A stretch of DNA of 64,000 bases, taken from Kudoa neothunni (taxonomy: Eukaryota > Animalia > Cnidaria). The notes under the pieces were generated by a model, which was given only the letters and a program-made list of their open reading frames with translations, ran no database searches and was not told the DNA's origin. This document shows positions 58,576 to 64,000 of the stretch, piece after piece (within the stretch, counting starts at the first letter, position 1; the number at the start of each line of letters is the position of its first letter). The translations under genes and the position numbers were made by a program. The stretch covers positions 8,667,904-8,731,903 of the forward strand of contig OZ199838.1 of assembly GCA_964304625.1 (NCBI GenBank), written 5' to 3'.

Positions 58576-61500
58576 TCAAGATTTTGCAATTCGTACATTG
58601 TACCATCGCAAAAATTTTTCTTGATTTTGCTGATGGATTTGATTAATTTTTGATTCATTAGGGGAATCATATTCTGAGATGTTGATGTCAGTTAGGTTGC
58701 TAAATATAAGGTTTCTTCCACTGCGATCTGTGATCGAACGTTTACTAATATAACCGTCAAATTCCAAATTCTCGTAGGATTCAAAGACATTTTTGTCCAC
58801 ATCCAATTTTTCTTTATCATCAATGATTATAGCTGGATTTTCTTTTTTCACTAAATAAACAGATTTATAATGTAATTCAACAAAATTGGTAAACTTTGTT
58901 TGGATTTGTACAATTTTTTAAACCAAGAGCAAAGTATTTCTGATGCGACTCTCCATTTAATTTCTTGGATCAGCTTATTTCTCTCTAGTTGTTCGGTAGA
59001 GGTTAAGCTGATCTCAGGGTCAATTGAATTTTGAGCAATTATAAAAAGCAACTGATGAAATGATATTATTGGATTTCTAACAGGTGGATCACCATTGCTG
59101 TAAAGTGCATAGTTTTTTCCATATGCAATTACCCTCAATTCTTTTTTCATTGTCTAAAAGGATAAATTAAAAAATTTTAGGTTTTAAATTCCTTACAAAA
59201 TAAGTGAAATAGTTTGCATCCTTAAATTCCAACATTTTAGCTTTGTAATAATCAAGTAGAGTAAATTCTGCAAAAAGGAGAGGCACTTCTCCACTTGCAC
59301 CTGGGTCAAACTTTTTCCACAGCATCTGGAAGAATGATATATCAGATGGGACAATATTTCCTGCTCCCACATTTGAGATAGCGAATAATGAAAAATTTGA
59401 AAGGACCATGGCAATTAGAAGATTTAGAAAAATAAAAGTCACGATAATCTAGAATATTTACATAATTAAACAGTGAAAATATTGAAAAATAATTTACAAG
59501 ATAAGAAATAAAATAGAGGATTGCGGTGACTTTGTTTCCACAATCCGAATGATTAGTATCACTCGCAAGAGTACAATATGGGAATTCGACAGCAGTATCA
59601 AAGAGAAAACCAGCCCAGCCATCACAATTAGCCACTGCGAATAACACAAAGAATGCATTATAACTGTTTTGAAAATTGAAAACATTATCCAGAGATTTTC
59701 CTAGTCTAGTCAAACCGAACAACACCACTCCAGCGAGAGCGTAACATTCGGTGATGAACACCAACACAAACAATAAATAAAAACTCTTGAGTATACTTTT
59801 GAATATAGTCAGAAGAACAGATTTGAGTTTTTCCCATTTGAAGAAAAGCAGCAAAAAGTATCCAATCAAAAGTATCATTATTACATAATTTAAAAATGCT
59901 CTGCTGGAAGATGTCTCTCCAATTTGAAGTCCAATAACAAGTACTACAAAAAGCGATACATCATAAACAGCTTGCAACTTGAAAAATTTAATATATTGAA
60001 CCACTCCTAATCCGAGGAATATTAAGCTGTGTATGATTATGAGTATAGACATGATAACTAATTGAACTAAAGTTTTATAAAATATTATATCCTTTTTCTT
60101 GTCGTCATTTGAGCCAACAATGCAATCAACTATAATAAGGCCAAATATAAGGATGGATTCAAAGATTCTCGTTCCATATAGAGACCCATAGTGATACAAT
60201 AGTTTTCGAAATGGATGATCTGACGGTTGAGGTTCTGTAAGTGGCCCAACAAGAAGAATTCTTTTTTTAAAGTCTTGCCATCGACGTTGTGGGAGAGTGA
60301 GTAAAGCAGTTCCAACATTTTCATTAAATGTTTGTACAATTACACCGATAAACATTGATAAAACCACCATATTACTTATAAAGAGATAAATGTAAAGGTA
60401 AATAGTGGCCAATGTTCCCATTTTAAGTTCAATAATAGAAGCAATCTACAATCGGCTAGTAAATGAATTGTTTCACAAACAGTTGTCACTTACGTCGTCC
60501 CATGCATCAATAGTCAGCAGAAGAAACGATGAAAGGTAGCTATCAGCCAGGTTATCGAAGTTGGCCAATGGTAGTGAGATGGGTGCTCTCGGTATAAGTA
60601 TCTCAGGAAAGTTCTCTCCAAACGATTTGTTGGAATTTTTGAAACCTGAAAATATTTAGTTGATTTAAAACAAAAATTAAAATCTACCGTATAAGGAATC
60701 GAAAGTGGGCTGGACCATAAAAGTCCCAGTACAGTTGTTCAAATCACCCACGGCTGGGTCATTACAAACGACCAACTTATTATTGAACAAATTAAAACTG
60801 TAGTAGGCGAAAATGTTCAGAAAAACCAAAAGAATAAGTGAAACTTTGAATATGTTTCTCCATCCTGAAATAACCTGTTGAACTACAGTCATCATTGAGG
60901 TGGACATTGAAATAACTGCCAAGGGTCGAGTACATCTAAGTGTCCTTATGATAAAACCGAGGGTATCTTGGCCGTAGAAAGATATGAAAGGTCTAAGCAT
61001 GAAATTTTATTGTTTTGGGAGTAGTTGAAAGATTAAAACAATCAAATCTGCAATACCTGCTCGAAGAGACTCCCGAATAATAAATTGCATGTATTATTGC
61101 CACAATAACATGGAACAACTTGATGCTACCTTGGAAATTCCTGGCATATGCGTGAGGTGTAAAAATCAGTCCATTAGAGATGGTTTTAAGGATAAATTCA
61201 ATCCCCAACACACATATGTAACAATATTCTATCAGTGTTGACCACAACCAATCGAAAACCATTCTATATGGATTTTCAAAAAGCATGGCGATAGTGCTTG
61301 TAGTTGTTGAGATAACCATCAACCCATCAAGTATTGTATTAGATGCTAAAAATCGATATATGGTTTCTTTGTTGAATTTTTCCAATCCAGTATCTGACGT
61401 TTCCTTACTCTAAACATGAAAATTTCTCTAATAATCTTTTGGAAATGTGGATTTACTTTGAGATGATAGTTAGCGATCTCTTGGCACCATTTTCTAAATC

Positions 61501-64000
61501 TATTTCGTTCTGTGAAGATAAATAATGAACTATTGATGAGAGGATGATTGGTTTCGATATCATCAAACGTACGACATCTAAAGTTTTTTATCTCTGCTAT
61601 TCTTCTTAAAATGATCTAGGGGAACCATTGTTATGATGTAACAATAAAATAAATACAGTGATGTTGCTATTTAGACTTAGGTCATCATTATTGTTTGAAT
61701 CTGGTAGTTTATTTTTGGTTGCAGCTTGAGATTGATTTTTAAACAACAGCGGTGTGTACAGAGAAGGTATCTCGTAAAAGAGAGTTTTTACTAGCATCTG
61801 ACGGTTAAAAATTTCAATTCTATTTTGATACGATTTGTTGCTAACCTAATTTTTTATTGGTTGATAGTAATAAACATATAATTATATTACAATTATTTTT
61901 TCATCGGTTTTTGAAGACGAAACCAATAATGGACAAAAATAATTTGAAAATTCTAGTATATTCTCAATTTTGAAACCTCTGATGATCATTCTTTCGATGT
62001 TCTTGATAAATCGGCTGGACAGAAATATTCTTATAAAGTGTTGACCAACTTTGATATCCAACGTTCCAACTAACTTCGAAGGAATTCTACACCATTCTGG
62101 GCTACTCGGAAACCATCTAAGTGTAGAATCGAATAATTTTAAGCTTTATTACATTTGATGATATTTAATTGCTAACTTTATTCCCTAATAAATAAATGAA
62201 TTGTGTTGTTTGAACTTATCGATTTAAATTGAGTTTCCGCTTATTGCGGGTAGCAATGCCAAAACTAGACTTAGTTTTTTGCAAAATCAAACATAAAAAT
62301 TAATGATTTTTTTTCATAATCTAATTGAGATAATATTTTCTGTTTTATTTATATTGATTTCGGGCCAAATTTTATAACAAGTTTTATATATAAATCGTAT
62401 CATGTACCTTTAAGCAATTTATCCTCATTTAACATACAAAATTATAGGTCAAAAGTTAGCGTTGATATTGTGTACTAAAAGCAAATATCATGACATCAAA
62501 TGCACTGTTTTCGTTAGATTCTTAAATGATAAATGATTCAGGAATAACAAGGAATAGGCGATATAAATTAATGTTTAATTGAAATTGAGGATTACTACAA
62601 ATGCGTATCAATTTTAGTCTTGTGATGTTTATTCAGATCCCCATTTAAACTGCCATACTATAAATAGCGGTGATTTGTTGTCTCAACTCATTCTCTTACA
62701 TTTTTCAATATAAATAAAGCTAGAAAAACGTTATATACACTTCAATAGTATTAAAAGTAAAAATAATTGCAGTAATATTACAGTTAGTTCCAGAGATTTT
62801 ATTATAGCCTTAGAAACAATGGCATATGGTTTATTTTAAAAACATTATCGTTTTTAGTGTTTATAAATCATTATCCCCAATGACCAATTTTAAATTTAGA
62901 TACAATCATTTAAATTTTTTTCACCTATATTAAAGTTTTATATAATAGTATACGACTTTATAAAAATACATCTGTTATTTATTAGCTGAATTTTGAATAA
63001 AACAAGAAAAAGAAATCTCGTTTATCGGACTACTAGAAAACGATATCAACTTAAAACAAACAACTTAAACCAGATTCAATAAGTATAAATCTTATAGCTA
63101 TTAAATAAACGGTTAAATAATGAATTGCTCTTCACCATATTCTTCGATTCTATATTGTTCTGACATTTGTATTAATGGAGATGAGAAATTATTGCAAATT
63201 TAATTCTATCAACATTCAATTTCTTAGGGACAATATTTTTGGTTTCATTCGCTCTAAAAATTCCACCAATAAAAATATTCTAAATAATCTGCTAGTTATT
63301 TTTTTAATTATAATCAAGATATTATCTAACATAATTAATTTGCGGCATAATTTATTAATTCTACTTTAAACTAAAAAAAGAAATTCTAGTATAATTTTTT
63401 TGACTTTACAGGAGTTTGTGTCTCGTGGAAAAATTAATATTCTTCATAAAAACGTCCAAAATTTATATTTTGCTACATTCTCTTTATAAGAAACTCTAAG
63501 AATTAATTCATGAAATTTGAAACGAATACCTAAAGCCTTTTTAATTCCAACCCGGCTTTTTATAATTAATGTAGTTTTCAATAAAATTAAATGAAAATTA
63601 TATTTGTTCGCACCTGTAAACTCTTACAGTGAAAGGCATCACATCTTTGATAGTTATCTTTGAATCAACGGTCACATTGATGGAATAATCATTTTCACTT
63701 TTATAATGATTGAAGTATTTGTCAAGAGTAGGAAAATCTATCGTGAATATATTTTGATATTTTATCATTTCTTTTTCAGTCAGTTGTAAATTTCCCAGAA
63801 TAACTGCAATAACAACGTTCATCATAATTGTTACAGACAGCATGTGGCATCCTGTGAGAAGGAGAATGATAAAATAACTGAGTACACTGTTTGCTTCATT
63901 GGCCAAACCATATATTTCATCAAATGCAGTATCCTAAATGGATATTATATATTAATATCAATGTAATTATAACCTGAAGGAAAATGTTGAATATTAGTTT
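58576..64000 (-). CDS. NALCN: Sodium leak channel NALCN, partial (from domain II P-loop to C-terminus; 5' part beyond window)
   Basis: VIAVILGNLQL (IIS6), HPLINSSLFIFTERNRFRKWC, LKTISNGLIFTPHA, LRCTRPL, KLVVCNDP, FNENVGTALLTLPQRRWQDFKKR, SDCGN and IQ-like VASEILCSWFKK. Stop at 58576-58578. Confidence 0.93.

What the first reader, a model, noticed from the sequence alone, without database searches (positions are those of the whole stretch)
59615..63976. NALCN with an apparently all-aspartate selectivity filter (x-D-D-D)
Seen in sequence: DII pore FNIFLQ|DTAFD (Asp codon 63931-63933), DIII FLLLTIDAWDD (60506-60508) and DIV FAVANCDGW (59621-59623). Established: human NALCN has FQILTQEGW, LSLKGW and VTGEDW (EEKE filter), and invertebrate NALCNs use EKEE/EEEE. 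The DII Asp aligns ungapped with the filter Glu, 29 residues before the conserved S6 His. Inference: the Na-type Lys is gone and all three visible positions are Asp, a ring more like CatSper (DDDD) or T-type (EEDD) pores. This could be a Ca2+-preferring or otherwise retuned leak channel.
Basis: partly seen in the sequence, partly recalled or inferred. Interest (0 to 1): 0.8.

Follow-up and report, generated by a model that had tools for sequence, protein, structure and literature searches.

The report
Myxozoan NALCN channel with Asn-Asp-Asp-Asp filter
A nerve-less fish parasite (a myxozoan, very probably Kudoa neothunni) keeps an intact sodium-leak-channel (NALCN) gene. Its four ion-selecting residues are Asn-Asp-Asp-Asp, not the Glu/Lys sets reported for animal NALCNs, so it probably passes or senses ions differently; this is untested.

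Summary
GAT (Asp) codons sit at 63931-63933, 60506-60508 and 59621-59623 on the minus strand. HMMER and MAFFT alignments place them in the selectivity-filter columns of NALCN domains II, III and IV.

The gene is an intact 16-exon, 1696-codon NALCN orthologue that runs off the window. Domain I, just outside it, has Asn, so the ring is N-D-D-D and not all-Asp. The neighbouring positions are G/T/A/G, so the domain IV "beacon" Asp is absent. The pore Trp is lost in domains I and II.

A tree places the gene with myxozoan NALCNs inside cnidarian NALCNs. The genome's statistics match the published Kudoa neothunni assembly.

A second myxozoan at 49% identity has the same N-D-D-D ring. Thelohanellus kitauei has D-G-D-D and Myxobolus x-x-D-D, while a jellyfish has EEEE. 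About 35 non-myxozoan NALCN representatives carry only Glu or Lys at the domain III and IV positions.

I found no alternative pore exons. No RNA reads could be laid, so expression is untested. Function is inferred: a Lys-free cation pore with three short carboxylates, probably Na+/Ca2+ non-selective and less blocked by Ca2+.

An adjacent-window note of this scan (s1-708293) saw the domain I and II residues of the same gene.

Verdict: a new variant of a known kind, of moderate interest.

The parts
63974..64000 (-). 3' end of exon 5 (domain II S5 and pore helix, '...KLIFNIFLQ'). The exon starts outside the window, at extended coordinate 64405.
   Evidence: The splice donor is GTTATA.
63934..63973 (-). 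40-nt GT-AG intron immediately before the domain II filter codon.
   Evidence: The relative L004 reads the same peptide with no intron here.
63614..63933 (-). Exon 6: domain II filter Asp (GAT, 63931-63933), 'DTAFDEIY', S6 with its conserved His, and the start of the II-III linker.
61891..62116 (-). Exon 7: II-III linker containing the conserved 'FPSSPEWCRIPSKL' motif. It follows a 1497-nt intron (62117-63613).
   Evidence: It is homologous to L004 and T. kitauei. The exon boundaries are inferred.
61657..61845 (-). Exon 8: II-III linker.
   Evidence: Boundaries are inferred from GT-AG sites and homology to L004.
61457..61615 (-). Exon 9: end of the II-III linker ('NHPLINSSLFIF...').
61057..61409 (-). 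Exon 10: domain III S1-S3.
60688..60992 (-). Exon 11: domain III S4 ('RTLRCTRPL'), S5, and the turret with its two conserved Cys.
   Evidence: Pfam Ion_trans at E 1.3e-8.
60494..60645 (-). Exon 12: domain III pore loop with filter Asp (GAT, 60506-60508), 'LLLTIDAWDD'.
59498..60445 (-). Exon 13 (316 codons): domain III S6, the III-IV linker, and domain IV S1 to the pore loop, with filter Asp (GAT, 59621-59623), 'AVANCDGW'.
59197..59448 (-). Exon 14: domain IV S6 ('LNLLIAMVLSNFSLF') and the start of the C-terminal domain.
58895..59153 (-). Exon 15: C-terminal domain.
58576..58850 (-). Exon 16: C-terminal tail and stop codon (58576-58578).
   Evidence: The junction was chosen among GT-AG candidates and is inferred.

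Best explanation
SHOWN. The finding lies in the 3' three-quarters of an intact 16-exon gene. The gene spans extended window coordinates 66089-58576, which is G000:C1:8726479-8733992 on the minus strand. It encodes a 1696-residue orthologue of the sodium leak channel NALCN in a myxozoan, very probably Kudoa neothunni, a parasitic cnidarian without neurons.
- The four selectivity-filter (high-field-strength) residues are Asn-Asp-Asp-Asp.
- The residues just after them are Gly/Thr/Ala/Gly, so there is no Lys and no domain IV 'beacon' Asp.
- The pore Trp is replaced in domain I (Phe) and domain II (Ala, then Phe).
- Asp in domains III and IV is shared by all four myxozoan sequences of this type.
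- The full N-D-D-D ring is shared by two species that are 49% identical.
- The eight extracellular-loop cysteines and the III-IV linker are conserved. The pore loops are more conserved than the rest of the protein.

INFERRED. This is a working pore under purifying selection whose ring was rebuilt from the cnidarian EEEE state. The route was probably through an Asp-rich, possibly D-D-D-D, stem-myxozoan ring.
- Three short carboxylates and one amide should give a wider, weaker-field site than EEEE. The absence of Lys removes the Na+-type signature.
- In human NALCN, Glu280 and Asp1390 are two of the three side chains most needed for divalent block. Their counterparts here are neutral (Asn and Gly).
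- I therefore expect a cation leak channel that discriminates poorly between Na+ and Ca2+ and is less blocked by extracellular Ca2+ than human NALCN.
- Its cellular role in a nerve-less parasite is unknown.
For: - Identity: PDB best hits are NALCN for every exon tested (E 4e-36 against Nav 4e-15). In the IQ-TREE tree the gene pairs with relative L004 (support 100). It sits in a myxozoan clade (96), inside cnidarian NALCN (96), inside metazoan NALCN (99), apart from fungal Cch1.
- Ring: domain I Asn aligns with Glu280, domain II Asp with Glu554 and domain IV Asp with Glu1389. All four sit in the filter columns of the 80-sequence MAFFT alignment.
- Intactness: 16 exons, all GT-AG, 5091 nt with no internal stop.
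- Conservation: L004 has N-D-D-D, T. kitauei D-G-D-D and M. squamalis x-x-D-D. Pore-loop identity to T. kitauei is 44.6% against 29.3% for the rest. To L004 it is 62% in three loops, or about 63% against 48.5% once domain III, mis-mapped, is hand-aligned. All 8 extracellular Cys are kept.
- No alternative pore exons exist in 56000-69000.
- About 35 non-myxozoan NALCN representatives carry only E or K at the domain III and IV positions.
- Functional analogy: E280A, E554A and D1390A nearly abolish divalent block of human NALCN, which conducts no divalents (PMC7182417). Asp filter residues without a beacon Asp accompany Na+/Ca2+ non-selectivity in EukCatA (PMC10120453).
- Organism: the genome has 40.26 Mb in 4 contigs, the second of 12.04 Mb, about 30% GC and introns of about 45 nt. 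The K. neothunni assembly has 40.2 Mb, N50 12.0 Mb, three chromosomes plus a mitochondrion, 30.41% GC and 49-bp introns (PMC12239612).
Against: - There is no expression evidence. Three RNA runs labelled with this organism laid no reads at all on the locus. That is no test, and PMC12239612 reports that few RNA reads map to this parasite.
- No electrophysiology exists for any NALCN with an acidic, Lys-free ring (PMC3557258; bioRxiv 10.1101/2025.04.04.647097), so selectivity is extrapolated from other channels.
- UNC79, UNC80 and Mid1/FAM155-type partners were not detected, apart from one weak UNC80_C exon hit.
- The lineage evolves very fast, with branch lengths above 1 substitution per site. 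A paralogue and a Cav-like gene in the same genome have also lost acidic filter residues. General relaxation of pore constraints therefore cannot be excluded.
- Several linker exon junctions are inferred without RNA, especially exons 3/4.
Confidence: 0.6

Rival explanations
1. Relaxed constraint. In a neuron-less, fast-evolving parasite the NALCN pore no longer needs to select or conduct ions. The protein persists as a sensor or scaffold, or is slowly decaying, and N-D-D-D is a product of drift with no retuned function.
For: - Very long branches for all myxozoan NALCNs, and only about 33% identity to other NALCNs in the most conserved exon.
- The pore Trp is lost in two domains.
- Paralogue B in the same genome has a ring read as S/G/E/Q.
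- The Cav-like gene has His where domain I Glu should be (scan note s1-708278 reports H-S-Q-E).
- The ring differs between myxozoan lineages: N-D-D-D against D-G-D-D.
- Auxiliary subunits were not found.
- There are no RNA data.
Against: - The reading frame is open across 16 exons and 1696 codons in AT-rich DNA.
- The ring is identical in two species at 49% identity.
- The pore loops are more conserved than the rest of the protein.
- All eight extracellular Cys and the III-IV linker are retained.
- Three of the four positions keep a carboxylate in every A-type myxozoan sequence.
Confidence: 0.25
2. One reading: a CatSper-like or T-type-like, Ca2+-selective all-Asp pore.
For: - Three Asp and no Lys.
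- T. kitauei has Asp in domain I.
- Our domain I AAT and T. kitauei's domain II GGC are each one substitution from an Asp codon and two from a Glu codon. A D-D-D-D ancestor is therefore plausible.
Against: - Domain I is Asn in both Kudoa-lineage species.
- No Asp follows the filter residue in any domain (G/T/A/G). CatSper and the Cav channels carry such an Asp, and it is what correlates with Ca2+ selectivity (PMC10120453).
- Asp filter residues without it correlate with non-selectivity (PMC10120453).
- The tree excludes kinship with Cav3; CatSper is a single-domain channel.
Confidence: 0.1
3. Artefact: wrong exons, a mis-assembly, or alternative Glu/Lys pore exons of the kind known for NALCN exons 15 and 31 would restore a canonical filter in the real mRNA.
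For: There are no RNA data. A 1497-nt intron follows the domain II pore exon, which is where other animals keep a second copy of that exon (PMC3557258).
Against: - tblastn with our own and foreign domain II and III pore peptides finds no second copy anywhere in 56000-69000. The next hits, at E 0.019 or weaker, are S6 segments of other domains.
- The relative has domain II S1 to S6 as one ORF with the same Asp.
- Four DNA runs hold 83-100% of the words of exon 13.
Confidence: 0.03

Closest known systems
Animal NALCN (human EEKE; jellyfish and other early-branching animals EEEE; EKEE/EEEE or EEKE/EEEE splice forms in many invertebrates)
   Same: One polypeptide with four 6-TM repeats. Orthology is supported by the tree and by best hits. 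The III-IV linker motif, the NALCN-type S4 segments ('LRIPRAL', 'RTLRCTRPL'), eight extracellular-loop cysteines and the C-terminal domain are conserved.
   Different: The filter is N-D-D-D, not E-E/K-E/K-E. The following positions are G/T/A/G, whereas the review PMC10120453 reports G/G/G/D for every animal NALCN. The pore Trp is lost in domains I and II. The domain IV S4 Arg is missing. There are two paralogues in one genome.
Fungal Cch1 (the NALCN-related Ca2+ channel that works with Mid1)
   Same: Domain I has Asn at the filter position and Phe in place of the pore Trp. Cch1 representatives read 'SAN-TF' or 'GMN-GF', ours reads 'TQN-GF'. The ring is acidic and has no Lys.
   Different: Cch1 keeps Glu in domains II-IV. 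It forms a separate clade. No Mid1 was detected here. The domain I resemblance is convergent.
Cav3 (T-type) channels, EEDD filter
   Same: Asp at the filter position in domains III and IV.
   Different: Cav3 has Glu in domains I and II and an Asp next to the domain II filter residue (PMC10120453). It is strongly voltage-gated and is not orthologous.
CatSper and diatom EukCatA (single-domain channels with Asp filter residues)
   Same: Asp rather than Glu forms the constriction. EukCatA, which has Asp and no neighbouring beacon Asp, is reported as Na+/Ca2+ non-selective (PMC10120453). That makes it the closest functional analogy.
   Different: Both are tetramers of single-domain subunits with four identical residues. 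CatSper also carries the beacon Asp in all four subunits. There is no kinship with this gene.

Membership tests
NALCN (metazoan sodium leak channel orthologue group) | One polypeptide with four homologous 6-TM Ion_trans repeats | tested here: met
   Pfam Ion_trans matches on the exons. tblastn with full-length NALCNs covers domains I-IV in order. The spliced model has 1696 aa.
NALCN (metazoan sodium leak channel orthologue group) | Closer to NALCN than to Cav, Nav or Cch1, and placed inside the metazoan NALCN clade | tested here: met
   PDB: NALCN at E 4e-36 against Nav at 4e-15. Only NALCN is hit by the domain I exon and by the relative's domain II ORF. Tree support is 99 for metazoan NALCN and 96 for the cnidarian group that contains it.
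NALCN (metazoan sodium leak channel orthologue group) | Conserved III-IV linker and extracellular-loop disulfide cysteines of NALCN | tested here: met
   'FNENVGTALLTLPQRRWQDFKKR' aligns with the NALCN linker. Eight of eight conserved extracellular Cys are present.
NALCN (metazoan sodium leak channel orthologue group) | Filter ring EEEE, EDEE, EKEE or EEKE. This is typical of all described members but does not define orthology. | tested here: not met
   The ring is N-D-D-D. The described classes are given in PMC3557258 and PMC10120453.
NALCN (metazoan sodium leak channel orthologue group) | Position after the filter residue is Gly in domains I-III and Asp in domain IV. This is reported for every animal NALCN (PMC10120453); it is typical, not defining. 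| tested here: not met
   Gly/Thr/Ala/Gly. The counterpart of human Asp1390 is Gly.
NALCN (metazoan sodium leak channel orthologue group) | Works in a complex with UNC79, UNC80 and FAM155/NALF | tested here: inconclusive
   Pfam UNC-79, UNC80_N, UNC80 and Mid1 models gave no hit in the genome. One weak UNC80_C exon hit (21-24.8 bits) lies in a large unassigned gene. Divergence and introns limit the sensitivity of these searches.
Fungal Cch1 | Placement in the fungal Cch1 clade; N-E-E-E type ring | tested here: not met
   The tree separates it from Cch1 with support 97-99. Only domain I resembles Cch1.
Cav3 / CatSper (Asp-containing Ca2+ channels) | Orthology to Cav3, or a single-domain CatSper architecture; Asp next to the filter residue | tested here: not met
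   Searches exclude Cav kinship. The protein has four domains. No Asp follows any filter residue.

The most novel reading that the evidence does not exclude
Stem myxozoans rebuilt the NALCN filter from EEEE to an all-Asp ring. That made NALCN a Ca2+-permeable entry channel, which took over from a Cav channel that lost its own Glu ring in these nerve-less parasites. Later lineages each neutralised one position: domain I Asp to Asn in Kudoa, domain II Asp to Gly in Thelohanellus. Kudoa also duplicated the gene. N-D-D-D would then be a tuned, physiologically important Ca2+/Na+ leak, for example in spore activation or polar-capsule discharge.
Probability: 0.15. Interest if true: 0.75.

Novelty: new variant of a known kind. 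Interest (0 to 1): 0.55.

Why it matters
Reviews state that every animal NALCN filter is EEEE, EDEE, EKEE or EEKE. They also state that the neighbouring positions are always Gly, Gly, Gly, Asp (PMC3557258, PMC10120453). A whole parasite lineage breaks both rules while keeping the gene intact, which gives a natural experiment on what the NALCN filter does.

No Lys-free NALCN has been characterised electrically. A compact N-D-D-D or D-G-D-D ring is easy to graft into human NALCN, to test how side-chain length and charge number set Na+/Ca2+ permeation and Ca2+ block.

It also raises the question of what a 'neuronal' leak channel does in an animal without neurons. In this genome it exists as two paralogues, beside a Cav-like gene that has lost at least the domain I Glu of its ring.

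Tried and rejected
- RNA evidence. The look-up of sequencing runs listed three raw-read RNA runs for the organism label, but read laying laid no read on 6 kb covering all four pore loops. That is no test, not absence.
- Alternative pore exons. tblastn of our own and foreign pore peptides against 13 kb found none.
- More myxozoan orthologues. The search for homologous proteins with exon 13 returned only P0001. With T. kitauei NALCN it returned no further myxozoans.
- Auxiliary subunits. Pfam UNC80_N, UNC-79, Mid1 and UNC80 gave nothing. The single weak UNC80_C hit could not be confirmed by Pfam on neighbouring ORFs, by PDB search or by the protein atlas.
- Cav-like gene. Only domain I could be read. 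tblastn with a coral Cav found little more.
- The locus of scan note s1-718146 (L009) showed no recognisable channel ORF in my quick look, and I dropped it.
- Rejected readings. Cav or Nav identity is excluded by scores and tree. Fungal Cch1 membership is excluded by the tree. A pseudogene is unlikely given the open frame and conserved pore.
- Steps left out. The joined, spliced protein was used only inside local scripts (MAFFT, tblastn, IQ-TREE). It was not sent to any database search, structure prediction or fold search, so there is no 3D model of the ring.
- dN/dS was not attempted, because synonymous sites are saturated at 49% amino-acid identity.
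Full report
OBSERVATION. On the minus strand the window reads 'IFLQ' | 40-nt intron | 'DTAFDEIY', then 'LLLTIDAWDD' and 'AVANCDGW'. The Asp codons, all GAT, are at 63931-63933, 60506-60508 and 59621-59623, exactly as reported.

GENE MODEL. The gene runs off the window. I fetched the adjoining DNA of the same contig (L002 and L003). From open frames, GT-AG sites and homology I built a 16-exon model of 5091 nt and 1696 codons with no internal stop.
- It spans extended window coordinates 66089-58576, which is G000:C1:8726479-8733992 on the minus strand.
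- Introns are 40-64 nt, except for three of 142, 214 and 1497 nt.
- The pore-bearing exons are unambiguous. Several linker junctions, mainly exons 3/4, are inferred.
- The joined protein was used only in local scripts. It was not sent to database searches or to structure prediction, and those steps are left out.

WHAT IT IS. Exon 13 (316 aa) hits solved NALCN at E 4e-36, against 4e-15 for the best Nav. The domain I exon and the relative's domain II ORF hit only NALCN.
- A scan of 1.8 billion representatives gave one close relative, P0001 (52% identity). Next came Myxobolus squamalis and Thelohanellus kitauei 'sodium leak channel' at 32-35%, then ordinary NALCNs.
- An IQ-TREE tree of the segment from the domain III pore to domain IV S6 pairs the gene with its relative (support 100). 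The pair sits in a myxozoan clade (96), inside cnidarian NALCNs (96), inside metazoan NALCN (99). Fungal Cch1 is outside.

ORGANISM. The genome has 40.26 Mb in 4 contigs, the second of 12.04 Mb, about 30% GC and introns of about 45 nt. These figures match the published Kudoa neothunni assembly: 40.2 Mb, N50 12.0 Mb, three chromosomes plus a mitochondrion, 30.41% GC and median intron 49 bp (PMC12239612). A note of this scan reached the same name (s1-708278). Myxozoans have lost neurons (Gruhl and Okamura, as cited in bioRxiv 10.1101/116715).

THE RING.
- Domain I, outside the window at C1:8732930-8732932 (AAT), reads 'VYEASTQNGF'. HMMER aligns its Asn with Glu280 of NALCN without gaps.
- The domain II Asp aligns with Glu554 (through the relative's uninterrupted ORF). 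It lies 29 residues before the S6 His, as in human NALCN.
- The domain IV Asp aligns with Glu1389.
- MAFFT with 80 four-domain channels puts N, D, D and D in the four filter columns.
- The next positions are Gly, Thr, Ala and Gly, so the domain IV Asp (human D1390) is missing.
- The pore Trp is Phe in domain I and absent in domain II.
- An adjacent-window note (s1-708293) had read the domain I and II residues in the same way.

RELATIVES.
- A 9.5-kb contig from another sample (L004, 18% GC, 48.8% identity over 1557 aligned residues) carries the same N-D-D-D ring.
- T. kitauei has Asp-Gly-Asp-Asp. Its domain I lies upstream of the truncated annotated protein. M. squamalis shows Asp in domains III and IV.
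- The jellyfish Rhopilema and other cnidarian representatives have EEEE.
- About 35 non-myxozoan NALCN representatives carry only Glu or Lys at the domain III and IV positions.
- Pore loops are better conserved than the rest of the protein. Against T. kitauei the figures are 44.6% and 29.3%. Against L004 they are about 63% and 48.5%; this uses a hand-aligned domain III, because the script mis-mapped that loop across an intron. The three correctly mapped loops give 43 of 69 identities.
- Our domain I AAT and T. kitauei's domain II GGC are each one substitution from an Asp codon and two from a Glu codon. An Asp-rich, possibly all-Asp, ancestral ring is therefore plausible. This is inference only.

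NOT AN ARTEFACT. No second copy of the domain II or domain III pore exon exists in 13 kb around the gene, so alternative Glu/Lys exons of the exon 15/31 type are unlikely. Four DNA runs hold 83-100% of the sampled words of exon 13. Three RNA runs laid no reads at all. That is uninformative, and PMC12239612 reports the same scarcity of RNA reads for this parasite.

GENOMIC CONTEXT.
- Pfam Ion_trans finds only four other places in the genome, belonging to three loci. These are an IP3R-like gene, a TRPA-like gene and a Cav-like gene.
- The Cav-like gene's domain I S2-S3 exon hits Cav2 at E 1e-13. Its domain I pore loop reads 'SSSHHW', with His where Cav has Glu.
- A second, more divergent NALCN paralogue lies at about C1:15583400-15588700. 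Its best PDB hit is NALCN at E 9e-12, and I read its ring as Ser / Gly(Glu) / Glu / Gln. Its orthologue fragment, P0053, comes from the same sample as L004.
- UNC79, UNC80 and Mid1-type partners were not detected, apart from one weak UNC80_C exon hit. This is inconclusive.

MECHANISM (INFERRED). Human NALCN conducts monovalent cations, conducts no divalents, and is blocked by Ca2+ and Mg2+. E280A, E554A and D1390A nearly abolish that block (PMC7182417). Here the E280 and D1390 counterparts are neutral, and there is no Lys. The three remaining carboxylates sit on shorter side chains. In the classification of PMC10120453, Asp filter residues without a neighbouring Asp accompany Na+/Ca2+ non-selectivity (EukCatA). 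Small neutral neighbours favour Na+ permeation. I therefore expect a poorly selective Na+/Ca2+ leak with weakened Ca2+ block. The main rival is relaxed constraint, giving a sensor-like or barely conducting protein. The open frame, the conserved ring and the conserved pore loops argue against that rival but do not exclude it.

COMPARISON AND NOVELTY. By orthology this is a NALCN. It breaks two regularities stated for all animal NALCNs: the ring classes, and the Gly/Gly/Gly/Asp neighbours (PMC3557258, PMC10120453). Domain I converges on fungal Cch1 (Asn plus Phe). Domains III and IV resemble Cav3. The Asp constriction recalls CatSper and EukCatA, but none of these is kin. Full-text searches found no paper on myxozoan NALCN or its filter. 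I class it as a new variant of a known kind. It is interesting to channel evolutionists, but that is tempered by the general fast evolution of myxozoan proteins and by the lack of any functional data.

Noticed in passing
G000:C1:~15583400-15588700, + strand (L014 3888-9240); outside the window: A second, much more divergent NALCN-family paralogue in the same genome. Its best PDB hit is NALCN at E 9e-12. I read its filter positions as Ser / Gly (followed by Glu) / Glu / Gln. Its orthologue fragment, P0053, comes from the same SRA sample as the relative L004. NALCN is usually a single-copy gene.
   Followed up: partly
G000:C1:7886329-7887015, + strand (L008 2815-3515); outside the window: A Cav-like gene. 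Its domain I S2-S3 exon hits Cav2 at E 1e-13. Its domain I pore loop reads 'SSSHHW', with His where Cav channels have the filter Glu. Scan note s1-708278 reports H-S-Q-E for the whole ring; I checked only domain I.
   Followed up: partly
L005:8781-9893 (Thelohanellus kitauei JWZT01005339.1): The annotated T. kitauei NALCN protein (KII61376.1, 1230 aa) is truncated. Domain I, with 'VYQGSIQDGW', is encoded upstream of the annotated start at L005:10001. The real ring is therefore D-G-D-D.
   Followed up: yes
L002:7567-9359, minus strand (extended window 71467-73259): Three adjacent ORFs in different frames upstream of the NALCN start give weak Pfam hits: zf-H2C2_5, DUF4371 and the hAT dimerisation domain. 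This looks like a decayed hAT-type transposon.
   Followed up: partly
G000:C1:10880215-10880409, minus strand (L016, L017, L018): The only UNC80-like signal in the genome is a weak UNC80_C hit (21-24.8 bits). It lies inside a long multi-exon gene of alpha-solenoid character that neither Pfam, PDB nor the protein atlas could assign. A Na+/Ca2+ exchanger gene lies next to it (L017:1587-3110, E 2e-43).
   Followed up: partly
window 62117-63613: The intron after the domain II pore exon is 1497 nt, against 40-64 nt for most others in the gene. It holds no recognisable second pore exon, and its content was not examined further.
   Followed up: partly
G000:C2:5005445-5006136 (L006) and G000:C2:8261315-8261788 (L007): Besides NALCN and the Cav-like gene, the only Ion_trans matches in the 40-Mb genome are two. 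One is an IP3-receptor-like gene with pore motif 'GGGIGD'. The other is an ankyrin-repeat TRPA-like channel. The channel repertoire is very small.
   Followed up: no
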